From the IMG/VR virus record IMGVR_UViG_3300034072_001021, positions 195,141-259,140 of that record: a stretch of 64,000 nt of DNA. One strand, written 5' to 3'. Each line of letters begins with the position of its first letter. The first letter of the stretch is position 1. A program made the translations under genes and the position numbers. Below the pieces are notes generated by a model. The model did no database searches. It saw only the letters and a list, made by a program, of their open reading frames with translations, and was not told where the DNA came from. Below, piece by piece: positions 7,464-38,392 of the stretch.

Positions 7464-8054
7464 ATGCAACTGAACGAAAACGATTTCAGTGAACTGGAAG
7501 CCATGGGTCGTGATACCTGTGCTCGTCTGCGCGAATCCGACTTCGTCAAGCGCCTACTGCCGCACCTGATCCCGTCTGAAGACGGCGACACCAATCGTCG
7601 TGTCGACATCTACGTGGCAGCTGCTGGTCATGCCAATCGCATGATCGAGGTGGTCGCCGACAACAACCCTGAAAAGGTGTTGTATGTCGTTCCTCCACTG
7701 ATCTCTCAGACCCCGATGGTGATCCGTTCTGAAGACTCTCGCCCCGAGACTTCGGTCAACGTGCTGGCAGACGAGTTCGAAGTATCGATCACCACTCAGC
7801 ATCCTGGTTATGTCATTGACCAGTATGTCCGTCGTCTGGTAGACCTGGCGTATAGCCCGACCGACGCCATTTCCATGCTGTACTCGCGTATGTGGGCCTC
7901 GATCTACATGCGTTACAACATTCCGCTGGAACGCCTGTTTGGCGATCAGGCCGATGCCGTCCGGAAAGAGTTCAATCTGGATCAGACAGCAACGGCTGAA
8001 GAAAAGGGCCCAAAACTCGATGACTTCACCGAAGACGATTTCGAACCCATGTGA
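7464..8054 (+). CDS. conserved hypothetical protein, 196 aa
   Basis: RBS GGAG, acidic C-tail, core-block position. Confidence 0.8.
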   Translation: MQLNENDFSELEAMGRDTCARLRESDFVKRLLPHLIPSEDGDTNRRVDIYVAAAGHANRMIEVVADNNPEKVLYVVPPLISQTPMVIRSEDSRPETSVNVLADEFEVSITTQHPGYVIDQYVRRLVDLAYSPTDAISMLYSRMWASIYMRYNIPLERLFGDQADAVRKEFNLDQTATAEEKGPKLDDFTEDDFEPM

Positions 8055-20513: not shown

Positions 20514-22670
20514 ATGAAAATCGATGTGTATAGTCATGCCATCCGTGTAACTGATGTCATTACAGATCGCGACTTGCAAGCAATGATGTCGTTCTGTCGT
20601 CCGTTGGTTGAATACGGATTCGAGAAGAAAGGGAAGCGGTTTGTCCCTAAGGGTCTCCGTACATACGCGTCTGCAACACGTAATCGCAAAGAGTTCGGTT
20701 TTCATCGGAATCAACTGCAAGATTTGAAACGCCATTTGTTTCAGAATCATGGTTACGTGGAGCGACTCGTTCCGATAACTTATCATCCTATCGAAGAGAT
20801 CAAGGTCGAGAAAGTTGAATTTGAAATCCGCAAGATGCATTCTCCTCGTGAGAAGCAGGTGGGTATCATCGACTACGTACTGGATGATGAGAATCCTGCA
20901 TGGGATGCCATCATTAAGATGGTTACGTTGCAGACAGGTGGTGGTAAAGCACTGTCAGTAAAAACACCAGTACGTATACCTGGTGGCTGGAAGCTGATGG
21001 GTCAGTTGAAGGTGGGTGATGAGATCATTGCTCGCGACGGATCAACGACCACAGTGAAAGGATATTATCCTCAAGGCCCGAGAAAGATGTACCGGGTTAC
21101 ATTTGAGGATGGTCGATGGGTCGACGCTGACCTTGAACATCTGTGGTATGTCCAGACATTCTCTGGATGGAGGACGGTCACTACCGAGACCATCATGTCC
21201 ATGATGAGTCGTCGGGCCGCTGTGAGCATTCCGCTTATTGAGCCAGAACGAGATAAGCTCAGGGAGCGCTTTGTCTCCATTGTCAGAGCACTCGGAACTG
21301 CTAAAGACGGTACATTCACAGTTAAAACCACCGATGCCAACAAACTGGCCTATCAGGTCCGTTCTGTAGGCGGTAAAGCATCCGTCCGGGACATGGGCGA
21401 CGGGTATTCCGCAGTCACTGTGGAGAAGCGTCCCAAAGAAAGAACACTGGCTATCCGCTCTATTGTTCCAGTAGGTGTCGAGGAAGCTGCATGTATCGAA
21501 ATCCACCACGAAGAAAAGCTTTACGTTGTGAAGGACTTCATTGTCACCCACAACACCTTCGTGGCTCAGTACTGCATGAACCAGCTAGGTGCACGCACCA
21601 TCATCCACTTCAAGGGTGGTTACGTGCAGCGTTGGAAAGACGATCTGGAGGAAACCTTCAACTTCAAACGTGGGGAGTTCCTGATTGTCCGTGGCTCCAA
21701 AGATCTGGCAGCATTGCAGCAGATGAGTCTTGATGGTGACCTGAAAGCTAAAGTCATTATCATCACTTCGGCTACGATGCGTGATTACATCAAGGACTAC
21801 GAAGAATCCAACGGACATAGCAAGCAGTTCCCAATCAAGCCTATCGATTTCTACCCGAAATTGGGTATTGGCTTCCGGGTCACTGACGAACTGCACCAAG
21901 AGTTCCACAACAACTACAGGATCGACCTCTATACCCACGTGCCCAAGTCGCTTGGTCTGTCTGCCACCATGGTCAGCTCAGACGCTTTCAAGAACAAGGT
22001 GTACGACATCGCCTATCCGGTAATGCAACGGCATGACGGTGGCGGGTATCACGTTTACATCGGTGTGATGGCTGTACTGTATCACATGGATGAAGATGTG
22101 CGGATTCGTTACATGGGTGCCCAAGGGTACTCACACACGACATTCGAAGAATCGATCATGCGACATAAAGGCCTGCTGAAGAACTACCTCAAGATCATCG
22201 ATCATGCGATTTACCATCGCTTCGTTTCGGTGCGCGAGGAAGGTCAGTCTGCACTGGTGTTCTTCGCCAGGGTAGATATGTGCACGCTGATGGTCGAACG
22301 CCTGAAGAAGATGTACCCTGAACTGAACATCGTCCGTTACGTAGGTTCTGAGAACGATTCGTACGAAGACTTCTTGGAAGCAGACATTGCGGTATCGACG
22401 ATCGGTTCTGCCGGTACTGCTGTTGACAAGCCCAACCTGCGGTCGAGTTTCATGACCACAGCGATCGATTCGCGCCAATCTAACGAGCAAGTACTGGGTC
22501 GTACCCGTCCGCTTAAAGACTGGCCACACGTGACTCCTGAGTTCATTTACTTCGGGTGTCTAGAAATCGATAACCACATGAAGTACCACCGTAACAAGAA
22601 AACGTTCTTCCACAGCAAAGTGCTGAGTCATGGGGAAATGATTTCTCGTTACGCGTTAACCCTGAAATAA
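20514..22670 (+). CDS. SF2 helicase (phiKZ gp75-like), intein-containing
   Basis: Walker A QTGGGK/T split by an intein; motif II DELH, motif III GLSAT, motif VI QVLGRTR. Confidence 0.92.
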   Translation: MKIDVYSHAIRVTDVITDRDLQAMMSFCRPLVEYGFEKKGKRFVPKGLRTYASATRNRKEFGFHRNQLQDLKRHLFQNHGYVERLVPITYHPIEEIKVEKVEFEIRKMHSPREKQVGIIDYVLDDENPAWDAIIKMVTLQTGGGKALSVKTPVRIPGGWKLMGQLKVGDEIIARDGSTTTVKGYYPQGPRKMYRVTFEDGRWVDADLEHLWYVQTFSGWRTVTTETIMSMMSRRAAVSIPLIEPERDKLRERFVSIVRALGTAKDGTFTVKTTDANKLAYQVRSVGGKASVRDMGDGYSAVTVEKRPKERTLAIRSIVPVGVEEAACIEIHHEEKLYVVKDFIVTHNTFVAQYCMNQLGARTIIHFKGGYVQRWKDDLEETFNFKRGEFLIVRGSKDLAALQQMSLDGDLKAKVIIITSATMRDYIKDYEESNGHSKQFPIKPIDFYPKLGIGFRVTDELHQEFHNNYRIDLYTHVPKSLGLSATMVSSDAFKNKVYDIAYPVMQRHDGGGYHVYIGVMAVLYHMDEDVRIRYMGAQGYSHTTFEESIMRHKGLLKNYLKIIDHAIYHRFVSVREEGQSALVFFARVDMCTLMVERLKKMYPELNIVRYVGSENDSYEDFLEADIAVSTIGSAGTAVDKPNLRSSFMTTAIDSRQSNEQVLGRTRPLKDWPHVTPEFIYFGCLEIDNHMKYHRNKKTFFHSKVLSHGEMISRYALTLK
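20949..21554 (+). mobile_element. class-3 (Ala1, W-C-T) intein, 202 aa, with degenerate endonuclease remnant
   Basis: Starts ALSVKTPV..GW..MG.L.VGD; block B DADLEHLW; block F EAACIEI; ends IVTHN/T. Confidence 0.9.
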
Positions 22671-31750: not shown

Positions 31751-32197
31751 ATGTCATTGGACATCATCGAAGCCGATCTCTTCGATATCCAGGCAGATAC
31801 CAAAGTCATCACGATTAACCTCGTTGGTGCCATGGGTGCAGGTGTCGCAAAGACTGCCAGAGATACAATCCCTGGACTGTATAAGCATTACAAGAAGATG
31901 TATCCGACTATCACACCGGATCAATTCATCCAGTATACCTACGGTGGAGTGAAATACCTCCTCGTCCCCACGAAGATTGATTGGAAAGCTCCATCGCCTC
32001 GTGACCTCGTATTGTCCAACCTTCACCGGTTGGCGTATCTGACCCGACGCTATAACGGGTTTGGTACAGTAGCCTTGCCACCAATGGGGTGTGGTAATGG
32101 TGGGCTGGATTGGGAGAATGATATCGTGAATTTCTATCACGCGTTGTTCGACCACCATCCTAGTAAATTTATAGCAGTAATAAAACCAAACCAGTAA
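31751..32197 (+). CDS. macrodomain ADP-ribosylglycohydrolase (DarG/Poa1-like)
   Basis: ADLF, NLVGAMGAGVA, ALPPMGCGNGGLDW. Confidence 0.88.
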   Translation: MSLDIIEADLFDIQADTKVITINLVGAMGAGVAKTARDTIPGLYKHYKKMYPTITPDQFIQYTYGGVKYLLVPTKIDWKAPSPRDLVLSNLHRLAYLTRRYNGFGTVALPPMGCGNGGLDWENDIVNFYHALFDHHPSKFIAVIKPNQ

Positions 32198-32206
32198 GGG
32201 GAAACA

Positions 32207-32647
32207 ATGGAAACTGTACGTCTTACCAACATCGGCAAACACCATCTTCCGAATATCCCACATGACGCGCCGTTGATCAGTATCAACGACCGTTACTCTC
32301 CGGCTCCGGAGATCCCGAACCGTGACAAACGGCCTGTGCTGTTTGTCACGTTCTTTCCGGGTGACCACCTGACCAGTACCGAGCGCCATGAGGGCATGAC
32401 GCCAGACCTGGCCAAGAAGATCGTCAAGTTCGTGGAAGAGCACCGCGACAAGAAGCACATCTTCGTTCAGTGCGGTGAAGGTCGTATCCGTTCCTGGACG
32501 ATCTGCAGTGTACTGGAACGCATGCTCGACTTCACTGTTCATGATACCGAGCGTGCGACCATCAAGCAAGGCATGGTGGACAAATACACCCACCACATCC
32601 TGATGTCCACGATCGTGGATATGGAGCAGGCTGGTGAACTGCTGTAA
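32207..32647 (+). CDS. protein-tyrosine/dual-specificity phosphatase-like protein
   Basis: CX5R loop HIFVQCGEGRIRS; LISI N-terminal strand. Confidence 0.8.
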   Translation: METVRLTNIGKHHLPNIPHDAPLISINDRYSPAPEIPNRDKRPVLFVTFFPGDHLTSTERHEGMTPDLAKKIVKFVEEHRDKKHIFVQCGEGRIRSWTICSVLERMLDFTVHDTERATIKQGMVDKYTHHILMSTIVDMEQAGELL

Positions 32648-32655
32648 AAAATAAC
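32644..32655 (+). promoter_or_regulatory. GTAAAAAATAAC motif just upstream of structured RNA A
   Basis: Identical to 1981-1992. Confidence 0.4.
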
Positions 32656-32672
32656 GGCAGTAAGCTATATTT

Positions 32673-33098
32673 TGTAGAAGTGTCTGTCGCTCGAGTTGCC
32701 CCCGATAAGAGCGACAGACATGACTACACATCGTCCTTGCTGAATGAAGCCCGCGATGAAAAACAAGAGGCAGAAACAACGAGTGGGGTTAGTCGCCACT
32801 CTTGTCCAAAATGGTGAACTTACGGGGTAGCCTGAAAACTGTACCGGCTTAGTCAGCTGGTGAACCGTACGATCCTCTTCTGGATCTGGAGCGTAGCCCT
32901 CTCCATTCGGAGACGGTTAACTCCAGGGACTAATCCAGTTTTGGGTAAGTTGTTTGCGTATCTTTCTGCATAGCCTGACGAGGGCATAGCAGGACAGGAC
33001 GCACGCAGCCGTTGAGTCCTATAGATCCACCGGTGAGGCCGCCCGAAAGGGCCGCCGGGCTGCCGGGTACGGATTTGCTGGCCAGCCTATAGGACTCA
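32673..33098 (+). ncRNA. candidate large structured RNA A (about 425 nt)
   Basis: 12-bp stems 32681-32692/32709-32720 and 33013-33024/33087-33098, nested hairpins, a GAAA tetraloop, no credible ORF; strand inferred from flanking genes. Confidence 0.65.
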
Positions 33099-33131
33099 TA
33101 GTACTAATTCAACCACCATGAGGACGACCTC

Positions 33132-33302
33132 GTGATCCCAAGTGTGAATCTCTCCTCTCTGCGTCAGCTCAATCGTGATCGCGATTCGACGGACAACCGT
33201 CAGAAGACGCTTGATCGCGTTGCAGAGTACCGTGCTGCAGATGAGAAAGTCAAGCAGGTCTGTCAAGAGAAAGACCTCGAGATTCCTGAGATGCATTGTT
33301 AG
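33132..33302 (+). CDS. small hypothetical protein, 56 aa (not in ORF track)
   Basis: GTG start after GAGG; reads VIPSVNLSSLRQLNRDRD...EIPEMHC; stop overlaps the next RBS. Confidence 0.55.
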   Translation: MIPSVNLSSLRQLNRDRDSTDNRQKTLDRVAEYRAADEKVKQVCQEKDLEIPEMHC

Positions 33303-33311
33303 GAGTTTCTC

Positions 33312-33764
33312 ATGGAAATGTTCCTCGGTGTAAAGATCGTCGCAGCCAAACCCATGACCCGTCTGGAATACAACCAGTACCGTGGATGGGAACTGCCTAA
33401 GGACGAGCGTGGTGATGATGAAGGTTATCTCGTCGAGTACTTCGAGAGCGAACCCAACCATCCAGACCACAAAGGTTACATCAGCTGGTCTCCCAAAGAG
33501 CAGTTCGATAAAGCACATTACTCCATGGGCTTTGTGGGCGACCTACCTCCGTTCATTCAACGAATTCATGGTGAAGCTGCACAGCTCGTGCAAAACTGCA
33601 CCAAGATCACTGACTTCATTACCAAGTGCAATGAAGGACAGATCGAGAACATCAACCCACAGTACCTCGACCTCATGATTCGCCAACGTGCGGTCATGGA
33701 GACCCATCTGGGAATCCTGCGTGATCGTCTCGAAATGCTCGCTAAAGGGAAATCCACCCTATAG
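33312..33764 (+). CDS. two-domain candidate anti-defence nucleotide-sponge protein
   Basis: N-domain GVKIVAAKPMT..Y..YRGW..EGYLVEY..YISWSPKEQFDKA; C-terminal helical hairpin LMIRQRAVMETHLGILRDRL. Confidence 0.8.
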   Translation: MEMFLGVKIVAAKPMTRLEYNQYRGWELPKDERGDDEGYLVEYFESEPNHPDHKGYISWSPKEQFDKAHYSMGFVGDLPPFIQRIHGEAAQLVQNCTKITDFITKCNEGQIENINPQYLDLMIRQRAVMETHLGILRDRLEMLAKGKSTL

Positions 33765-33777
33765 TGTGCATATTACC

Positions 33778-34390
33778 GAAATACGAGTAATGGCAGAACA
33801 GACGGCAGCTATCACGGCGGCTTAAGGTGTTCTGTAAAGGGGTGGTTCCCGTTCCGTTACTGGTTTATCTTGAGATATACTCTGCCAATGGCTGACTGAC
33901 CGAGTGCACACTCCCTCAGGCTTCTGTAGCAAGAGAAGAACACAGCCAAGGGGCGGCGTTCTCAAGATTACAGGTGTTGGCTTCACCCAGCATCAAGTCC
34001 CAACGATTTATGGTAGCTTAAGTTCGAAGCGCCGATCGCCATTGTGCAGATAAGGCAGCGCGGATCGGATTGGGAGATTCCCGGTCGGCTACCACCCGTT
34101 AGGACATCCGTGTCCTTGATTCCATGTCAGTCGGCAACAGCTCTTCGTGGCAGTTCGCATTCAACGACTCGGCAGCCTACGTGGCGGCCAACTGGATAGA
34201 GGCACGGGTGTCCGTCTAAATCGGCAGACCTCGTGAGCTGTTGATCCAACCGACAACGATCAGAAACCTCCCTTCGTCGGGCGGCCAGATAGGTCATTAG
34301 TTGGTTGAAGACTCAGGGTGCCATCAGAACTGCACCCATGTACGCAAGTACATACCGAGGGGTTAAAGTCCCAAGCTCTGGCTCGTTTTC
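33778..34390 (+). ncRNA. candidate large structured RNA B (about 610 nt)
   Basis: Closing helix 33778-33787/34382-34390; helices 33867-33875/33960-33968 and 33891-33900/34126-34135; ends 3 nt before tRNA-Asn; no ORF of 60 aa or more in any frame. Confidence 0.7.
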
Positions 34391-34393
34391 AAT

Positions 34394-34468
34394 TCACGCT
34401 TAGCAAAGTGGTAATGCAGCAGACTGTTAATCTGCCTACCCCTGGTTCGAATCCAGGAGCGTGAGCCA
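34394..34468 (+). tRNA. tRNA-Asn (GTT)
   Basis: Acceptor TCACGCT/AGCGTGA, anticodon arm GCAGA-CTGTTAA-TCTGC, TTCGAAT loop, encoded CCA. Confidence 0.95.
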
Positions 34469-34469
34469 T

Positions 34470-34650
34470 ATCCGTAAACTACTGTTTCGACAGGAGGGGT
34501 GAAAATCCCAACACGGTGTCCCAGAAGTACCGGCGTAAGCTGGGTTCTCCGGGCCTTAACCTAGCTGGTTGACTGGTCGGTGCTTTGCATCTAAGTCCGC
34601 TTCAGGACATCAACTATAAATAGGGCTGGAGACAGCCCCATTTATTCTCT
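34470..34650 (+). ncRNA. candidate structured RNA C ending in a GNRA terminator-like hairpin
   Basis: GGGG-TGAAAAT-CCC T-loop-like element, GGC-GTAA-GCT, GGGCTG-GAGA-CAGCCC then T-rich. Confidence 0.4.
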
Positions 34651-34670
34651 TTCGTCAGAAAGGGAAGAAT

Positions 34671-34796
34671 TCAAGTGATTGGAAACCGTGCACCGTGTGA
34701 TTCGGGCTTAGCCTTAAGACACCATTAACGTCTGAGGGGTGATCCTTTACAACCGCATCTGCAGTTGTGGTGGTTTGACTCCACCCGCTTGTCTCA
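34671..34796 (+). ncRNA. tRNA-like element with expanded core
   Basis: T-arm GGTGG-TTTGACT-CCACC (34769-34785); CAAGTG/CGCTTG acceptor-like pairing. Confidence 0.35.
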
Positions 34797-34800
34797 AACC

Positions 34801-34887
34801 GGGGAGCCCCCAGAGGGTGCTAATCTAGCCCGCTACATCCGTACTCTCCCGTCGGGTACACCAGGGTGTCTGGCCTGCTCCCCACCT
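34801..34887 (+). pseudogene. degenerate tRNA-like element
   Basis: Perfect 7-bp GGGGAGC/GCTCCCC followed by ACCT; internal CCCG/CGGG and CCAG/CTGG stems; no TTC loop. Confidence 0.45.
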
Positions 34888-34892
34888 ATTTC

Positions 34893-34966
34893 GCCTCTAT
34901 AGCTGGAAGGTCAAGCAGCTCACTTGTAATGAGCCGATCTCAGTTCGATTCTGAGTGGAGGCACCA
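34893..34966 (+). tRNA. tRNA-Thr (TGT)
   Basis: Acceptor GCCTCTA/TGGAGGC, anticodon arm GCTCA-CTTGTAA-TGAGC, TTCGATT loop, encoded CCA. Confidence 0.95.
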
Positions 34967-34970
34967 TATT

Positions 34971-35341
34971 GGGACTGATCGGCGTCGTCACTGGTTATTC
35001 TGAAACCTAAATGCGCAAGCACATGGTTATGGATATAAACGATCAACGAAAGTGAAGTCGTTGCAATGACGAACGATCAGCCCCTCTCAAGCGCGCTTGT
35101 AAGAATGTACTCGGTTGCCGATCCAAAGTAACCCTCGTAAGGTGAATTCAGCGTATAGACCTCAGGATGAGGGAAAATGCCCGGACACGAGAGGAACACA
35201 TTCTTACAAGTGGATTATTTACCGTGTAGTCTCTCAGGCGGGACACTCTCCACAGGAGCCTTCGGCACCACCACCCCACCCTATAGTGACTGGTGACCTG
35301 TTGGTGTGGAGAGGCATGTTCGATTCTAGTGCACGGTACCC
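34971..35341 (+). ncRNA. candidate structured RNA D (about 370 nt, tmRNA-sized, tRNA-like ends)
   Basis: Starts 4 nt after tRNA-Thr; 13-bp perfect helix 35096-35108/35198-35210; GNRA and UUCG hairpins; GGGACTG/CGGT(A)CCC end pairing. Confidence 0.6.
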
Positions 35342-35477
35342 TATTTCGATGATCGGCCTCGACTGCTGGCAGTGTGCCCTCAGGGTTGTGGAGATAACCT
35401 GAACGGATGACGGCAGTAAGGGCGGTGTCCACTACCCTAGAAACTTGGGTCATCGAACGAACAAAAGGACAGTGAAT

Positions 35478-35933
35478 GTGAAATGGGTCACCTGGATCGT
35501 TTCGTTATTGTTCGTGTTTGTCATGCACTACGCCGACGCTTACCCTCTCACCGAGATCAAACTTCTCAGTGATGACGTGACCAGCGTTTATGATGGCGAT
35601 ACGCTCACTGTCCAAGTGCCCTACATTCCAGACGTGTTTGGTAAAGACCTCTCCATCCGGATTGTGGGTATTGACACACCTGAGATGCGTAGTACGTGCG
35701 CAACTAAGGAACAACGTGATCGTGAGAAAGCTTTGGCCATCAGGGCCAGAGACGTAGTGGTTGCCATGGTTACATCGGGTCATCGAGTGACCCTGACCAA
35801 CCTCGATCGAGATAAATACTTCCGTATGCTAGCAAGTGTTTATGTCGACGGACGAAGTGTTTCCGATGAGCTGATAGCTCAAGGACTAGCCGTCCCTTAT
35901 TCAGGCGACACCAAGATAGGCTGGTGTGGCTAA
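35478..35933 (+). CDS. thermonuclease (SNase-like) with N-terminal signal/TM anchor
   Basis: VYDGDT, IRIVGIDTPE, DKYFRMLA, LIAQGLA; hydrophobic WVTWIVSLLFVFVM; GTG start after AAAGGA. Confidence 0.9.
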   Translation: MKWVTWIVSLLFVFVMHYADAYPLTEIKLLSDDVTSVYDGDTLTVQVPYIPDVFGKDLSIRIVGIDTPEMRSTCATKEQRDREKALAIRARDVVVAMVTSGHRVTLTNLDRDKYFRMLASVYVDGRSVSDELIAQGLAVPYSGDTKIGWCG

Positions 35934-35944
35934 TGATTCCACTG

Positions 35945-35985
35945 GTTTTATTTTTGCAGATACATTACTCATCTGACAAATAACC
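35945..35985 (+). promoter_or_regulatory. putative early promoter inside a long imperfect hairpin
   Basis: GGTTTTATTTTTG-CAGAT-ACATTACTC-ATCTG-ACAAATAACC. Confidence 0.65.
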
Positions 35986-35995
35986 AATGGAGGTT

Positions 35996-36544
35996 ATGAT
36001 GGGTAAACTAACGGGCTGGACTGTCGACGACGAGGAAGAAGTATTCGTTCCCTGTCCAGACTATCCAGACCTTTTCGACATAGGTTCTAAAGGGACTCTT
36101 AGAAGCCGCCGTACTGGTAAAATCTTATCCCAAACCCCTGACCATAAAGGCTACCTTAGACATGCCACTAAAATAGGCGGTCGTTCAGGTAAGTCGATTT
36201 GCGTAAGGGTTCATGTTCAGGTTGCTAAAGCATTTGTTGGAAGAGAATCTGACGATCTGCAAGTAAACCATCTGACAGGCGATAAGGCAAAGAACGATTA
36301 TACATCTCTCGAATGGTGCACTGGTAGTCAGAACTTAGAGCATGCACATGCTACTGGCTTAATGCGTAATGCCAAGGGAGTTGACCATCCATTAGCAGCA
36401 CTTTCTCCCGAAGATGTTGCGGTTATACTTTCTCTTAAAGGGAAGGTTAGTCAGAGAGAACTCGGAAGAAGATTTGGGGTAAATAAATCAACCATAGCCA
36501 GAGTCCATAATGGAATCGGTTATGGTGAAGAAGACCCTAGCTAG
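35996..36544 (+). CDS. free-standing HNH homing endonuclease (NUMOD4-like N-terminus, HTH C-terminus)
   Basis: VHVQVAKAF..QVNHLTGDKAKN..LEWCT..QN; C-terminal SQRELGRRFGVNKSTIARV. Confidence 0.88.
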   Translation: MMGKLTGWTVDDEEEVFVPCPDYPDLFDIGSKGTLRSRRTGKILSQTPDHKGYLRHATKIGGRSGKSICVRVHVQVAKAFVGRESDDLQVNHLTGDKAKNDYTSLEWCTGSQNLEHAHATGLMRNAKGVDHPLAALSPEDVAVILSLKGKVSQRELGRRFGVNKSTIARVHNGIGYGEEDPS

Positions 36545-36588
36545 TACTCCGCCAAACAACACCACTCCAAACCAAAAGAGTAATTGAG

Positions 36589-36765
36589 ATGACCACCACT
36601 GTACGAGTTGAAGCTCACTGCGCTAACAACAAGCAAGTTGTCGTGACCATCCAGAACCGTGTTTCCGGTGAGGTGCATGAAACGTTCATCTTGCAGGACG
36701 GTGAAAAAGCTGATCGCGTTGTCTACGACGATCGTCAGCTGCTGACCCATGAAGAATTGAAGTAA
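36589..36765 (+). CDS. small hypothetical protein, 58 aa (not in ORF track)
   Basis: MTTTVRVEAHCANNKQVVVTIQNR...HEELK; phage-like codons; upstream AAGAG. Confidence 0.65.
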   Translation: MTTTVRVEAHCANNKQVVVTIQNRVSGEVHETFILQDGEKADRVVYDDRQLLTHEELK

Positions 36766-36772
36766 AAGTTTT

Positions 36773-36975
36773 GGGATCTTAGCATAGTCCTGTGGGCTTT
36801 TGACACGGGGTGGTTAATGCGCCTTGCGGTACTCTTATCGGTGTATAGGGCAGTAGCGCATGTGGGTGGTTCTGCATGTTAGCGAAATCCCACAAGACCA
36901 GTGGGTTAATCAGGAATCCGAACGGTAAGAAAAGACGCAAAGGAGAAGGGGGTTCGAATCCTCAATTTCCCGCCA
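36773..36975 (+). ncRNA. candidate RNA E: tRNA-framed 203-nt RNA with insertions
   Basis: 5' GGGATCT-TAGCATAG..TGGTTAATGC D-arm with inserted hairpin; 3' GGGG-TTCGAAT-CCTC and ATTTCCC-G-CCA. Confidence 0.6.
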
Positions 36976-37127
36976 AACACGCCTCCTCAGAAGGGAGCTA
37001 GCCGCCTCCGAGGTCCATCCGGAGGAGGGTTCGATGTGTAACACCCAGATGGACTGTTGTACGATCTGGACATGTACCAGCCGCAGCAAGTGACTACGGT
37101 TGAAGCAGTAACCGAAACAAGCCTCTG

Positions 37128-37156
37128 ACTCCCTGCTGGTCAAACCGGCAGGGAGT
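37128..37156 (+). terminator. hairpin terminator closing the RNA cluster
   Basis: ACTCCCTGCTGGT-CAA-ACCGGCAGGGAGT. Confidence 0.7.
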
Positions 37157-37190
37157 TATGCTCCTATTCCATAAACGCAAGGGGTAAACC

Positions 37191-37571
37191 ATGAATATCC
37201 AACACATTCGTCAAATCCACAAGAAAGATGTACATGCACTGTATATCTGGAACGGGGATACCGTATCCATGCTGGAGAATAACATCTCCGTCCAAGTCTA
37301 TGTCAACGAGACCCCCATCGAAATCGACAGTGATTCTGTCATGATCAACGATGATGGCTCTGGTTACATTTTCAACGTCCGCTCCAATGATGTTGAGTGG
37401 CTGAAAACCTACGTAAAGGAAATGTTCCCTCATTTGATCGATGTAGGTCACCCCGTCGTAGATGGTGAAATATTCGATACGTGGTTTGCTTTCGTGGATG
37501 AACGTGGCGCCAAGGTCATCAACAACGATGACGCTGGCTGCACCATCGTGCAGTGGCCTGCCAATGGCTAA
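37191..37571 (+). CDS. hypothetical protein, 126 aa
   Basis: RBS AAGGGG; overlaps the next start. Confidence 0.75.
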   Translation: MNIQHIRQIHKKDVHALYIWNGDTVSMLENNISVQVYVNETPIEIDSDSVMINDDGSGYIFNVRSNDVEWLKTYVKEMFPHLIDVGHPVVDGEIFDTWFAFVDERGAKVINNDDAGCTIVQWPANG

Positions 37572-37755
37572 GGATCGTTTCTCCGAAAGTACGGAAAGCA
37601 TCTACCGCAACAGCCGGTACGTAGTCTCTCGCGAATTCGGTATAGCACCGAATGGCAATCGTTTCAACGGCATGTGGGTAGTACGTGATATCAAGACTGG
37701 CGAGTACGTTGAGCATTCCGCTCATCGACACGACATGCTTGAGAAGTACGTATGA
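37564..37755 (+). CDS. small hypothetical protein, 63 aa
   Basis: MAKDRFSESTES...; followed by a terminator. Confidence 0.6.
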   Translation: MAKDRFSESTESIYRNSRYVVSREFGIAPNGNRFNGMWVVRDIKTGEYVEHSAHRHDMLEKYV

Positions 37756-37787
37756 GGGGAGGAGGGCGATCCCTCCTCTTCTTTTTT
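37756..37787 (+). terminator. intrinsic terminator
   Basis: GGGGAGGAGGG-CGAT-CCCTCCTCTT plus T-tract. Confidence 0.75.
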
Positions 37788-37798
37788 GCCTGATTCTT

Positions 37799-38392
37799 AT
37801 GACATTAACCAACTTGGTCACTGCTATGATTTCGATGGAAGCAGCAAAGAAAGAATGGCATCCTGAGTTCACTCCTTCCTTTACTCCGGAGGAGATGCTC
37901 AAGATGGGTGTCTTCGAAGGCAAGTACATCAATATCATCAAGGGTATCCCTAGCTCGTGGAAGAAACTTCCTAAAGTCGTAGGCCCGAAGGATGAAGCTG
38001 ATGTGGAGCTGAACTACTATAAGATCAAGTCACGTCAGCCTCTGTCTGTCTGGAAGAAGAACGGATGGATCATGACGGATGAAGGCGGATGGTTCCATTG
38101 GTACTGTCTCTACTATCTGGGTCGTCGTCTCGGCAAAGAAGATGACACTCAGGTAGGGCGCTGGAAGAGCTTTGTGGCACGTCACATGGGTCAAGTCAAA
38201 GCCAGTTGCCGCCTCAACGATGAGAAGTGCCATACTAAGCAACGTCAAGGTCTTCTTCAGTGGGCTTGGGATTCGACCACGGCGTTCACTGATGAACAAC
38301 GTGAGAAGAACCTCAAGCGTATGCTGAAGCTGACAGGAACATCTCTACCAGAAGTATCTCAGGAAAGCTTACCGCCTTCCTTCAGATGGTGA
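37799..38392 (+). CDS. conserved Trp/Tyr-rich protein with putative SME propeptide (candidate head-packaged cargo)
   Basis: FTPEEML.MGVFEGKY, GWF.WYC.YY.GRR, QVGRW..F..RH; N-terminal ISME/AA. Confidence 0.8.
   Translation: MTLTNLVTAMISMEAAKKEWHPEFTPSFTPEEMLKMGVFEGKYINIIKGIPSSWKKLPKVVGPKDEADVELNYYKIKSRQPLSVWKKNGWIMTDEGGWFHWYCLYYLGRRLGKEDDTQVGRWKSFVARHMGQVKASCRLNDEKCHTKQRQGLLQWAWDSTTAFTDEQREKNLKRMLKLTGTSLPEVSQESLPPSFRW

What the first reader, a model, noticed from the sequence alone, without database searches (positions are those of the whole stretch)
32644..37156. Cluster of large, unassigned structured RNAs interleaved with tRNAs and putative counter-defence enzymes
Seen: about 2.5 kb of non-coding sequence in an otherwise gene-dense genome. 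It resolves into at least five heavily paired units (A 32673-33098, B 33778-34390, C 34470-34796, D 34971-35341, E 36773-36975), separated from real tRNAs by only 3-6 nt. T-loop-like hairpins recur (GGGG-TTAAAGT-CCC near 34360, GGGG-TGAAAAT-CCC near 34496, GGTGG-TTTGACT-CCACC at 34769, GGGG-TTCGAAT-CCTC at 36949), as do GNRA/UUCG caps. Known: large phage ncRNAs (GOLLD, ROOL) sit beside tRNAs, and tRNAs or tRNA-like ends guide RNase P/RNase Z processing. Inference: one long transcript is cut at tRNA and tRNA-mimic boundaries into several large RNAs of unknown function, possibly decoys for anticodon nucleases or tRNA-sensing defences, or RNP scaffolds. This is the best candidate here for an undescribed system.
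Basis: partly seen in the sequence, partly recalled or inferred. Interest (0 to 1): 0.85.

Follow-up and report, generated by a model that had tools for sequence, protein, structure and literature searches.

The report
Structured RNA island beside phage tRNAs
A giant bacteriophage carries a 4.5-kb island in which two tRNA genes are interleaved with several conserved, folded RNAs that match no known RNA family, among them a tRNA look-alike with one giant arm; what they do is unknown, but evolution is clearly preserving them.

Summary
Window 32648-37190 (+ strand) of a DT01-like, phiKZ-type jumbo phage has 2,439 nt in five gene-free blocks around tRNA-Asn and tRNA-Thr. No Rfam family matches them (E<=10), and ORFs inside them hit no Pfam/PHROG family. 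Single-sequence folding is not decisive (coding controls give similar z-scores). Comparison with about 14 related phage lineages is decisive. The blocks resolve into modules (A, B-head/B-core/B3, C3, D, E, E') that recur in variable order. Several are better conserved than neighbouring genes (E' 98-99% identical where third codon positions are 44-60%). A, B and E' show compensatory changes well above shuffled controls. E is a discrete 210-nt cassette with a tRNA frame (acceptor, D arm, T arm, encoded CCA) whose anticodon arm is replaced by a ~125-nt domain. Protein cassettes (Tad2-like sponge, SNase, HNH homing endonuclease) are interspersed. Most likely this is a hyperplastic tRNA-operon-like island whose spacers are functional RNAs released by tRNA processing. 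Function is unknown; tRNA-mimic or host-interaction roles are plausible but untested. These are new RNA families of a known kind (GOLLD/ROOL, T4 RNA C/D).

The parts
32648..32727 (+). Head of block A: the repeat ATAACGGCAGTAAG (32651-32664; second copy at 35407-35420), then a 20-bp-arm hairpin (32673-32728).
   Evidence: Shared with L028. In L033, L036 and L059 this position is occupied by a B-head module.
32728..33110 (+). RNA module A (~380 nt). The 5' domain has two hairpins with UUAGUC loops. An internal loop GACUAA is complementary to those loops. A large multibranch 3' domain is closed by a 12-bp helix (33013-33024 / 33087-33098).
   Evidence: Consensus folding energy -108.6 against -37.1 +/- 5.1 for column shuffles; 38 compensatory pairs against a shuffle maximum of 17. 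The 5' domain is conserved with covariation in 7 lineages. Folding favours the + strand.
33132..33302 (+). 56-aa ORF, probably a real small gene.
   Evidence: A gene is called at the same place in L028. No family hit.
33312..33764 (+). 150-aa protein. The N-terminal half resembles DUF2829 (Tad2 family); the C-terminal half matches PF21825 (crAss001_48 / Sequestin).
   Evidence: DUF2829 = Tad2 per bioRxiv 10.1101/2023.05.01.538930.
33786..33861 (+). B-head: outer helix P1 (33786-33793 / 33854-33861), a long hairpin P2, and the hairpin GGGGUGGUUCCCG (33839-33851).
   Evidence: The hairpin is invariant in six lineage types (W, L029, L030, L041-type, L061, DT01). L058 has a diverged version that keeps only the central UGGU. 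P1 and P2 change sequence but keep pairing in W, L029, L030, L041/L059, L061, L058 and DT01. These helices were read by eye; the automatic alignment failed on them.
33862..34213 (+). B core, including domain B3 (34102-34213). B3 is closed by a 12-13-bp long-range helix.
   Evidence: W against DT01: consensus energy -88.7 against -16.5 +/- 3.6 for shuffles; 18 compensatory pairs against a shuffle maximum of 12. The B3 closing helix is GGACAUCCGUG/CACGGGUGUCC in W and L033, and GGAAAAGGCC/GGCCUUUUCC in DT01, L030 and L029. Positions 34000-34226 are 97.4% identical to L033.
34214..34393 (+). 3' extension of B, with the hairpin GGGGUUAAAGUCCC (34358-34371). It is part of an indel (34227-34610) that carries tRNA-Asn.
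   Evidence: Absent from L033 and DT01. No homologue was found to test its structure. z = -1.8.
34394..34468 (+). tRNA-Asn (GTT), CCA encoded.
   Evidence: 66.8 bits.
34469..34610 (+). C5: spacer after tRNA-Asn, with the hairpin GGGGUGAAAAUCCC (34495-34508).
   Evidence: Part of the 34227-34610 indel. Only a 23-nt match elsewhere. Status uncertain.
34611..34892 (+). RNA module C3. It contains a T-arm-like hairpin (34769-34785) joined without a gap to the 3' strand of a closing helix (34672-34677 / 34786-34791), followed by a 3' multibranch domain that runs up to tRNA-Thr.
   Evidence: 94.3% identical to L033 and 81% to L058, with compensatory changes in the T-arm-like stem and other helices. 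The T-arm is not kept in the L036-type copy.
34893..34966 (+). tRNA-Thr (TGT), CCA encoded.
   Evidence: 58.2 bits.
34967..35444 (+). Block D, made of sub-modules: D5 (34967-35084), D-mid a (~35107-35197), D-mid b (~35221-35339) and D3 (35340-35444). D3 holds the second ATGACGGCAGTAAG repeat and lies upstream of a protein cassette.
   Evidence: D5 and D3 are shared with L033. D-mid a is shared with L055/L057 and D-mid b with L058 at about 80%, with a few compensatory pairs. This is the weakest unit: z = -1.7.
35445..35933 (+). Staphylococcal-nuclease-fold protein (162 aa).
   Evidence: PF00565 at 3.7e-11. Sits at a different place in the islands of L055, L058 and L061.
35987..36544 (+). Free-standing HNH/NUMOD4/HTH homing-endonuclease-type gene (185 aa).
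   Evidence: Found only in the window among the relatives mapped.
36589..36765 (+). 58-aa ORF, conserved across the clade.
   Evidence: 20 homologues at 48-100% identity. No family hit.
36767..36976 (+). E: a tRNA-like cassette. The mature-like RNA would be 36773-36975: GGGAUCU-UA, D stem GCAU/AUGC (with a 31-nt insert in the D loop), a 7-bp 'anticodon' stem opening into a ~105-nt three-way-junction domain, a 4-5-nt variable loop, T arm 36948-36964, then AUUUCCC-G-CCA.
   Evidence: Precise insertion relative to L033 and L036. 99.5% identical to L058 and 98.6% to L061/L062, with unrelated flanks. A short variant lies at L042 102-282 (84%), whose MFE is a cloverleaf. Not called by default ARAGORN or by the Rfam tRNA model. 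Relaxed intron-mode ARAGORN calls the L042 copy.
36976..37166 (+). E': a ~190-nt RNA that closes the island. It has hairpin h1; hairpin h2 whose invariant loop GGUCCAUC can pair with the invariant GAUGGACU (pseudoknot); two small hairpins; and an 11-bp terminal hairpin (37128-37156) followed by the invariant GUUAUG.
   Evidence: Covariance model R1 finds one copy per island in 14 sequences (156-230 bits) and none in the phiKZ, LucasX or FLC9 loci. 97.4% of cells are paired; 12 pairs change on both sides, reached by 0 of 500 shuffles. The pseudoknot has 8 bp in 14 of 14 sequences, with one A-U to G-U change. 98-99% identical across five lineages.
37191..37571 (+). 126-aa protein of unknown function, usually the first gene after E'.
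   Evidence: In L036 a different gene follows E'.

Best explanation
The region is a hyperplastic tRNA/ncRNA island of a DT01-like, phiKZ-type jumbo phage.

Shown: between a conserved structured leader (B-head, B3) and a conserved structured trailer (E') lie cassettes that relatives gain, lose and reorder. These are tRNA genes, a tRNA-like gene (E), other structured RNA modules (A, C3, D parts) and small protein genes (Tad2-like sponge, SNase, homing endonuclease). The RNA modules are genes in their own right. They lie on the + strand, are kept by selection for sequence and base pairing, and belong to no described RNA family.

Inferred: the island is transcribed by the phage's own RNA polymerase as one or a few tRNA-operon-like precursors. 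Host RNase P (at tRNA 5' ends, and probably at the acceptor/T-arm frame of E), together with RNase E and 3' exonucleases (just after the encoded CCA ends), would release the spacers as discrete stable RNAs. E' would be capped at its 3' end by its terminal hairpin.

Speculative: because the modules behave as accessory cassettes, carry tRNA-like parts and sit among anti-defence-type genes, their most likely role is in host takeover. They may act as tRNA mimics or sponges that engage tRNA-binding host factors or tRNA-targeting defences, rather than in core replication or assembly.

My confidence by layer: about 0.85 that these are conserved structured RNA genes; about 0.55 that they are co-transcribed with the tRNAs and released by tRNA processing; about 0.25 for the tRNA-mimic or host-interaction role. 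The overall figure given refers to the first two layers together.
For: Identity of the phage: the window is IMGVR_UViG_3300034072_001021, a 259-kb contig. Its hub protein is 63% identical to Pseudomonas phage pPa_SNUABM_DT01. Split RNAP beta subunits lie nearby.

No known family. No protein signal in the blocks.

Conserved structure:
- A: -108.6 against -37.1 +/- 5.1; 38 compensatory pairs against a maximum of 17.
- B: -88.7 against -16.5 +/- 3.6; 18 against a maximum of 12.
- E': 12 covarying pairs, 0/500 shuffles reach this.
- C3 and D parts show compensatory changes.
- G-U pairs and folding energies favour the + strand for A, B, E and E'.

Constraint: E' is 98-99% identical where the adjacent gene has 44-60% identity at third codon positions. 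B3 is 97% and C3 is 94%, against 65% at third positions of the Tad2-like gene.

Cassette behaviour: module order and content differ among about 14 lineages. A compact form in L030 joins B-head, B3 and E' with no tRNA between them. E is a discrete 210-nt unit with unrelated flanks in three genomes.

tRNA frame of E. E' starts right after a tRNA CCA end in L044 and L048, and right after E in the window.

Adjacency to tRNAs.
Against: - There are no transcript data, so co-transcription, cleavage sites and RNA stability are all inferred.
- Single-sequence stability does not exceed that of coding controls.
- All homologues come from one narrow clade. None was found in IMG/VR beyond the window's own contig, in GTDB genomes, or at the syntenic sites of LucasX and FLC9 or the tRNA region of phiKZ. 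The covariation counts therefore rest on few independent events.
- Near-identity of E, and partly of E', may reflect recent gene conversion or cassette transfer rather than constraint.
- Some island sequence is clearly debris: a chimeric pseudo-tRNA in L036 and a B-head region in L033 that has lost its pairing partner.
- Segments 34214-34393 and 34469-34610 have no informative homologues.
- Nothing ties any module to a defence system.
Confidence: 0.55

Rival explanations
1. The modules are cis-acting parts of a tRNA operon and its neighbours: a 5' leader, spacers and a 3' trailer or terminator. They would set transcription, processing order, precursor stability or expression of the next gene, and would have no life of their own as RNAs. 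E' in particular could be a terminator/insulator or a translational operator for whatever gene follows.
For: B-head/B3 always open the island and E' always closes it. E' ends in a strong covarying hairpin followed by an invariant GUUAUG. In the window-like sequences the 3' strand of the hairpin contains a GGGAG Shine-Dalgarno-like stretch just before that AUG. A protein gene always follows within about 30-50 nt.
Against: L030 keeps B-head, B3 and E' although it has no tRNA to express. The reading frame after the conserved AUG is not conserved: short uORFs of differing sequence, in frame or out of frame with the gene. The downstream gene differs in L036. A, C3 and E move as independent cassettes, and 150 nt of E' upstream of the hairpin is 98-99% conserved. 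That is far more than a terminator needs.
Confidence: 0.2
2. Much of the non-coding DNA is evolutionary debris of a recombination hot spot: decayed tRNA genes, remnants of cassettes and homing-endonuclease scars. Apparent conservation would be due to recent exchange between co-infecting phages.
For: There are chimeric and low-scoring pseudo-tRNAs in relatives (L036 225-306; DT01 7841-7912). L033 has a truncated helix partner. Indels are sharp (34227-34610; 35085-35339; 36767-36975). An HNH homing endonuclease lies in the island. E is 99.5% identical in otherwise ~71-83% identical backgrounds. Single-sequence z-scores are ordinary.
Against: Debris does not keep base pairing through compensatory changes. 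It also does not stay 80% identical with covariation between the window and the DT01/L030 branch, where neighbouring proteins have diverged to about 50-63%. Modules A, B, C3 and E' occur in most of the 14 lineages.
Confidence: 0.1
3. The conserved folds act at the DNA level, as hairpins in single-stranded DNA or as protein-binding sites: a replication or recombination origin, or target sites for cassette exchange.
For: Cassette-like turnover between fixed boundary elements recalls integron-type or homing-type exchange. Short repeats sit at module borders: ATRACGGCAGTAAG twice and CCACCCTATAGTG twice.
Against: Many conserved G-U pairs would be C-A mismatches on the other strand. Consensus energies favour the + strand for A, B and E. 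The modules carry tRNA-type features (T arm, D arm, CCA) and have the orientation of the tRNAs. No integrase or recombinase gene lies in the island.
Confidence: 0.05
4. Some blocks are unrecognised self-splicing or self-cleaving RNAs (introns or ribozymes) associated with the homing endonuclease or with tRNA genes. For example, E could be a tRNA with a novel intron in its anticodon arm.
For: The island holds a homing-endonuclease gene. E has a complete tRNA frame interrupted exactly at the anticodon arm. Relaxed ARAGORN in intron mode reads the L042 copy as a tRNA with a 101-nt intron.
Against: There is no match to any intron or ribozyme family in Rfam at E<=10. The insert (~105 nt) is smaller than known group I introns (own knowledge). 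Removing it leaves no 7-nt anticodon loop, because the 7-bp stem continues into further helices. No split protein or tRNA exons flank A, B, C or D. The relaxed ARAGORN run produced many obviously spurious calls.
Confidence: 0.05

Closest known systems
GOLLD and ROOL large ornate RNAs of phages and prophages
   Same: They are large (hundreds of nt), elaborately folded non-coding RNAs of unknown function, encoded by phages and often next to or linked with tRNA islands (bioRxiv 10.1101/2024.12.08.627333, read).
   Different: There is no sequence or structure match to the Rfam models of either family at E<=10. Here there are several smaller modules (about 120-430 nt) rather than one 600-800-nt RNA. 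The host clade is a Pseudomonas-type jumbo phage. Multimerisation is untested.
Stable RNAs C and D (species 1 and 2) of the phage T4 tRNA gene cluster, with the SegB homing endonuclease in the same cluster
   Same: They are non-tRNA stable RNAs encoded among phage tRNA genes, matured with them from common precursors, with function still unknown. A homing endonuclease gene sits in the same region, and the region is plastic.
   Different: The T4 RNAs are about 120-140 nt and unrelated in sequence. Here the modules are larger, more numerous and reshuffled between relatives. Processing is not shown here.
tmRNA and bacterial Y-RNA-like YrlA (tRNA-like domain joined to a large extra domain; own knowledge)
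   Same: E has a tRNA-like acceptor/T-arm/D-arm frame with a 3' CCA, and a large structured domain where the anticodon arm should end.
   Different: E has G3-C70 rather than G3-U70, and no conserved tag reading frame: one-nt indels separate the W and L042 copies. It is only ~200 nt and keeps a regular D stem. ARAGORN and Rfam call neither tmRNA nor YrlA. In YrlA the RNA ends lie in the Ro-binding stem, not in the acceptor.
Functional by-products of tRNA operons, such as the 3' external transcribed spacer of E. coli glyW-cysT-leuZ, which acts as an sRNA sponge (own knowledge)
   Same: E' is the last element of a tRNA-containing unit. It starts right after a tRNA or tRNA-like CCA end in several lineages and ends in the terminal hairpin.
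   Different: E' is much longer and more structured, with a probable pseudoknot. It persists where no tRNA is present (L030). No target complementarity was sought or found.
phiKZ ncRNA of ~100 nt from the PHIKZ298 3' UTR, in the tRNA-bearing part of the phiKZ genome (PMC8545117)
   Same: It is an abundant, processed, structured non-coding RNA of a phiKZ-type jumbo phage, near its tRNA genes.
   Different: The E' model and the B-head and E' motifs find nothing in that phiKZ region. The phiKZ RNA is a simple two-hairpin 3' UTR fragment.

Membership tests
tRNA (for unit E) | Seven-bp acceptor stem with a discriminator base and 3' CCA | tested here: inconclusive
   GGGAUCU against AUUUCCC gives 5 of 7 pairs (positions 5-68 and 6-67 are U-U and C-U), identical in W, L058, L061 and L042. 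G73 and CCA are encoded.
tRNA (for unit E) | D arm and T arm (5-bp stem, 7-nt UUCRANN loop) in canonical positions | tested here: met
   U8-A9, then D stem GCAU/AUGC. The D loop is 10 nt in L042 and 31 nt in W. The T arm is GGGGG-UUCGAAU-CCUCA (W) or GGGGG-UUUAAAU-CCCUC (L042), directly before the acceptor 3' strand.
tRNA (for unit E) | Five-bp anticodon stem with a 7-nt anticodon loop, and a score above threshold with tRNA models | tested here: not met
   A 7-bp stem continues into a ~105-nt three-way-junction domain. There is no hit with ARAGORN at default settings or with Rfam tRNA at E<=10.
tmRNA | tRNA-Ala-like domain (G3-U70), pseudoknots and a conserved tag-peptide frame; detection by ARAGORN or Rfam | tested here: not met
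   No tmRNA call at default settings. No Rfam hit in the window. E has G3-C70, and 1-nt indels between the W and L042 copies break any frame.
GOLLD RNA | Match to the curated covariance model (conserved 3' domain) | tested here: not met
   cmscan of 32000-37800 at E<=10, and of seven related loci at E<=1, gave no hit.
ROOL RNA | Match to the curated covariance model | tested here: not met
   Same searches, no hit.
Group I / group II introns and small self-cleaving ribozymes | Catalytic core recognised by Rfam models; flanking exons of an interrupted gene | tested here: not met
   No hit at E<=10. No split gene flanks any block.
RNase P RNA, 6S RNA, SRP RNA, T-box leader | Match to the curated covariance models | tested here: not met
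   No hit at E<=10. The resemblance of the B-head hairpin loop UGGU to CCA-pairing motifs is by eye only.
Phage tRNA-cluster stable RNAs (the T4 RNA C/D kind) | Non-tRNA RNA gene located within a phage tRNA cluster on the same strand | tested here: met
   The islands of relatives carry 0-4 tRNAs among the same modules.
Phage tRNA-cluster stable RNAs (the T4 RNA C/D kind) | Co-transcription with the tRNAs, and release as stable RNAs by tRNA-processing nucleases | not testable with these tools
   No transcriptome data were available. Only adjacency is shown: 0-6 nt to the tRNA ends, and E' starting after CCA.

The most novel reading that the evidence does not exclude
The island encodes a tRNA-centred RNA system with no described counterpart. 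E would be a processed, possibly CCA-active tRNA mimic whose giant arm recruits a partner. The conserved UGGU loop of B-head would pair with tRNA 3' ACCA ends, as T-box leaders and RNase P L15 do. The ultra-conserved pseudoknotted E' would work with them, or assemble into RNA-only particles as ROOL and GOLLD do. Together they would capture, shield or report on tRNA ends, and so defeat tRNA-targeting host immunity or control phage translation.
Probability: 0.12. Interest if true: 0.85.

Novelty: new variant of a known kind. Interest (0 to 1): 0.62.

Why it matters
Large structured RNAs next to phage tRNA genes (GOLLD, ROOL, the T4 stable RNAs) are a long-standing puzzle. They are abundant, conserved and still have no known function. 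This island adds several new families in a culturable lineage: Pseudomonas phage pPa_SNUABM_DT01 carries the B and E' homologues. Genetics and RNA biochemistry on them are therefore feasible.

Three features stand out. E' is conserved at near-rRNA level while its neighbour genes are saturated at silent sites. E is a mobile cassette with a full tRNA frame but a ~125-nt arm in place of the anticodon arm. And RNA modules are shuffled like accessory genes among anti-defence-type proteins.

If these RNAs act on tRNA-binding host factors or defences, they would extend phage counter-defence from proteins and spare tRNAs to designed tRNA mimics. If they only organise tRNA expression, they would show how a phiKZ-type phage handles non-coding transcripts.

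Tried and rejected
- Known RNA families. Rfam at gathering threshold over the whole window, at E<=10 over the region, and at E<=1 over seven related loci gave only tRNAs.
- Hidden tRNAs or tmRNA. Default ARAGORN gave nothing extra. Relaxed settings (-ps80, intron mode) gave mostly spurious calls, so only the L042 E call was noted.
- Hidden or broken protein genes. ORFs of 40-101 aa in the blocks had no PHROG or Pfam hit.
- Thermodynamic stability as evidence. Dropped after coding controls gave comparable z-scores.
- Sigma-70 promoters and intrinsic terminators. Counts were at or below shuffle expectation, and the phage has its own RNAP, so this is uninformative. phiKZ promoter motifs could not be transferred.
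- Wider distribution. Motif scans of IMG/VR found only the window's own contig plus chance hits. Of ten metagenome hits to the 19-nt B-head motif, four (L032, L034, L038, L039) and all three GTDB hits look like chance, being in unrelated contexts. The E' pattern is absent from GTDB genomes.
- Related jumbo phages. The syntenic sites in LucasX and FLC9 and the phiKZ tRNA region lack the modules.
- Paralogy between units. Only short shared motifs were found.
- uORF after E'. The AUG is conserved, but the peptide and frame are not.
- T-arm in C3 as a general feature. It is kept in W, L033 and L058 but not in the L036-type copy.
- B-head helices. The automatic alignment of B-head failed, so its helices were read by eye.

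Full report
WHAT THE REGION IS

The window is part of IMGVR_UViG_3300034072_001021, a 259-kb viral contig. The same sequence occurs as metagenome contig Ga0247725_1000019. Its 535-aa baseplate-hub-like protein is 63% identical to that of Pseudomonas phage pPa_SNUABM_DT01. It is 26-33% identical to proteins of Xanthomonas, Erwinia, Burkholderia and Serratia jumbo phages. Split RNA polymerase beta-subunit genes lie a few kb upstream. This is therefore a phiKZ-type jumbo phage with its own transcription apparatus. Sigma-70 promoter scans are uninformative here.

CHECK OF THE OBSERVATION

ARAGORN and Rfam find two tRNAs in the 64 kb: Asn(GTT) 34394-34468 and Thr(TGT) 34893-34966. Around them lie five blocks without supported genes:
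- 32648-33130
- 33765-34393
- 34469-34892
- 34967-35444
- 36766-37190

Together they make 2,439 nt, in a window that is otherwise about 90% ORF-covered. The ORFs inside the blocks (40-101 aa) hit nothing in PHROGs or Pfam. Rfam finds no other family at E<=10, and none in seven related loci.

Two meet strict T-arm criteria, against 0.04 expected by shuffling. Four of the five strict T-arm hairpins on the + strand of the whole window lie in this island.

The claim of heavy pairing cannot rest on single-sequence folding. The blocks give z = -6.2, -3.0, -3.3, -1.7 and -2.1. Nineteen 300-nt coding controls from the same window average -1.36 and reach -5.1. Unit E gives +0.75.

RELATIVES

No phage record matches at high identity. 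DT01 shares short non-coding stretches. Three routes recovered about 14 related lineages:
- the flanking proteins: the Tad2-like 150-aa protein, the 126-aa protein and the 58-aa protein;
- exact look-up of their contigs;
- a 19-nt motif scan of metagenomes.

The loci are L028-L031, L033, L036, L040-L048 and L055-L062. Several come from contigs of about 250 kb with the same gene order.

Mapping the window's segments onto these loci shows that the blocks are mosaics of modules. The modules recur in the backbone order A, B, C, tRNA-Thr, D, orf58, E, E'. Cassettes are inserted, deleted or moved:
- L030 has only B-head, B3 and E', joined in about 390 nt with no tRNA.
- L036 and L059 have B-head, a pseudo-tRNA, a short A, part of C3, orf58 and E'.
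- L058 has tRNA-Asn, A, B, two ORFs, C3, tRNA-Thr, D parts, tRNA-Leu, tRNA-Ser, orf58, E, SNase and E'.
- The window alone has the HNH gene.

Relative to L033, the window has sharp indels at 34227-34610 (carrying tRNA-Asn), 35085-35339 and 36767-36975 (E).

CONSERVED STRUCTURE

Module A (32728-33110).
- Four sequences at 73% mean identity give a consensus energy of -108.6 kcal/mol, against -37.1 +/- 5.1 for column-shuffled alignments.
- There are 38 compensatory pairs, against a shuffle maximum of 17.
- Its 5' domain is kept in seven lineages. It has covarying hairpins and invariant loops, among them two UUAGUC loops. An internal loop GACUAA could pair with these.

Module B.
- B-head has an outer helix and a long hairpin that change sequence but keep pairing across seven lineage types.
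- Both flank the hairpin GGGGUGGUUCCCG, which is invariant in six of those types. In L058 it has diverged and keeps only the central UGGU.
- This was read by eye, because MAFFT and RNAalifold failed on the segment.
- The B core of the window and DT01 gives -88.7 against -16.5 +/- 3.6, with 18 compensatory pairs against a shuffle maximum of 12.
- The long helix that closes B3 is entirely different in sequence in the W/L033 and the DT01/L030/L029 groups.

Module C3.
- It is 94% identical to L033 and 81% to L058.
- Compensatory changes occur in several helices. One is a T-arm-like hairpin joined without a gap to the 3' strand of a closing helix, as in a tRNA.
- That feature is not kept in the L036-type copy.

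Module D.
- D is composite. Two sub-modules recur at about 80% identity in L055/L057 and in L058, with a few compensatory pairs.
- It is the weakest unit.

Strand. For A, B, E and E' the + strand folds better than the - strand, and G-U pairs are frequent. This argues for RNA rather than DNA structure.

UNIT E

The segment 36767-36976 is a discrete cassette. It is 99.5% identical to L058 and 98.6% to L061/L062, with completely different flanks. In those genomes the neighbouring genes are only about 71% identical. A shorter variant (84% identical) lies in L042 just after a tRNA-Met-like gene.

With the two variants aligned properly, the consensus is a cloverleaf, and the MFE of the L042 copy alone is also a cloverleaf. 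Its parts are:
- an acceptor stem (5 of 7 pairs);
- U8-A9;
- a 4-bp D stem. The D loop is 10 nt in L042 and carries a 31-nt insert in the window;
- a 7-bp covarying stem that continues into a ~105-nt three-way-junction domain instead of an anticodon loop;
- a short variable loop;
- a regular T arm;
- G73 and an encoded CCA.

Default tRNA and tmRNA finders do not call it. It has no G3-U70 and no conserved reading frame, so it is not a tmRNA.

UNIT E'

A covariance model built from 11 sequences finds exactly one copy per island in 14 sequences (156-230 bits). It finds none in the phiKZ, LucasX or FLC9 loci.
- 97.4% of cells are paired.
- 12 pairs change on both sides, reached by 0 of 500 shuffles. 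Slid controls give 0-5.
- The covariation is concentrated in hairpin h2 and the terminal hairpin.
- The loop of h2 (GGUCCAUC) can form 8 bp with the invariant GAUGGACU in all 14 sequences. One A-U to G-U change preserves the pairing.
- The competing local helix that RNAalifold predicts is broken in DT01 and L030. A pseudoknot is therefore likely but not proven.

E' (without its terminal hairpin) is 98-99% identical in five lineages whose adjacent gene is 64-78% identical, with 44-60% identity at third codon positions. It is 80% identical to DT01 and L030.

E' begins directly after a tRNA CCA end (L044, L048), after E (window), after an ORF (L033, L036, L055, L058), or after B3 (L030). An invariant GUUAUG follows the terminal hairpin, but the frame and peptide after it are not conserved. 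The E' pattern is absent from 185,579 GTDB genomes, so it is not copied from a host.

HOW IT MOST LIKELY WORKS

Shown:
- The modules are conserved, structured, strand-specific, and next to tRNAs.
- Both tRNAs and E encode CCA.
- E has a tRNA frame.
- The modules turn over as cassettes between a fixed leader and a fixed trailer.
- The protein cassettes are a DUF2829/Tad2-like plus Sequestin-domain protein, an SNase-fold nuclease, a homing-type HNH endonuclease and, just upstream, macro/phosphatase-like proteins.

Inferred:
- Transcription as tRNA-operon-like precursors.
- Release of the spacers by RNase P, and by RNase E plus exonucleases. RNase Z is unlikely because CCA is encoded (established knowledge for gammaproteobacteria).
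- The terminal hairpin defines the 3' end of E'.

Speculative: accessory, host-directed roles such as tRNA mimicry or sponging. E cannot be an anticodon-nuclease decoy in the simple sense, because it has no anticodon loop. Enzymes that read the acceptor/T-arm elbow or the CCA end are better candidates.

The homing endonuclease and the sharp, near-identical cassettes suggest that gene conversion drives the mosaicism. This is the role described for SegB in the T4 tRNA cluster (own knowledge).

LIMITS

- There are no transcript data.
- The clade is narrow.
- Part of the near-identity may reflect recent exchange rather than constraint.
- Some segments have no informative homologues (34214-34393, 34469-34610).
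- Some island DNA in relatives is evident debris: the chimeric pseudo-tRNA in L036, and the lost helix partner in L033.

COMPARISON AND NOVELTY

The closest kinds are:
- GOLLD and ROOL, which are large ornate phage RNAs near tRNA islands;
- the stable RNAs of the T4 tRNA cluster;
- tmRNA and YrlA, for the architecture of E;
- spacer-derived RNAs of tRNA operons, for E';
- the phiKZ PHIKZ298 3'-UTR RNA.

None is a family match. I class the finding as new RNA families, and one new tRNA-mimic architecture, within a known kind of system. It is real and worth experiments, but its function is open.

Noticed in passing
window 36767-36976; L058 7283-7492; L061 7284-7493: The E cassette is 98.6-99.5% identical in three phage genomes whose neighbouring genes are about 71% identical, and its flanks are unrelated. 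This points to recent horizontal spread of a tRNA-like cassette.
   Followed up: partly
L036 225-306 (same in L040, L059, L060): A chimeric pseudo-tRNA. It has a tRNA-Asn-like 5' half, a GAAA tetraloop where the anticodon loop should be, a long variable arm, a good T arm, and a non-complementary acceptor 3' strand. Rfam tRNA scores it 29.3 bits.
   Followed up: partly
L001 (MW735835) 7841-7912: An unannotated, low-scoring tRNA-Lys(CUU)-like element right after CDS PA10_00181 in phage DT01. It is seen only with relaxed ARAGORN settings.
   Followed up: no
L042 303-437; L030 10793-10930: A conserved ORF of about 45 aa with a CPRC motif (zinc-ribbon-like) lies inside what first looked like non-coding island sequence. 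Small genes can hide in these islands.
   Followed up: no
window 33840, 34358, 34495, 34736: A small hairpin of the form GGGGU-N(2-5)-UCCC recurs. The k-mers GGGGT (9 against 0.9 expected), GGCAG (12 against 2.1) and GGTGGTT (4 against 0.34) are enriched in the non-coding blocks relative to the rest of the window. This may be a protein- or nuclease-binding motif.
   Followed up: partly
window 32651-32664 and 35407-35420; 33754-33766 and 35276-35288: Two exact or near-exact direct repeats (ATRACGGCAGTAAG and CCACCCTATAGTG) lie at or near the borders of modules. They are candidate promoter, processing or recombination signals.
   Followed up: no
window 34893-34966 compared with L033 1521-1597 and L058 6227-6300: tRNA-Thr is only 70% identical to the L033 copy, although the adjoining C3 module is 94% identical. 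It is 96% identical to the L058 copy. tRNA alleles are swapped independently of their flanks.
   Followed up: no
window 20514-22670: The 718-aa helicase-like protein has an internal stretch (residues about 135-245) that hits PHROG families annotated as large terminase, DnaC-like helicase loader and DNA primase. The LucasX DnaB-like helicase in the fetched locus is annotated as intein-containing, so an intein or inserted domain is possible.
   Followed up: no
window 31751-32647: Two small proteins lie upstream of the island: a macro/phosphatase-like protein (PHROG 335, weak Pfam Macro hit) and a homologue of the DT01 'putative protein tyrosine phosphatase'. With the Tad2-like gene they give the neighbourhood an anti-defence flavour.
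   Followed up: no
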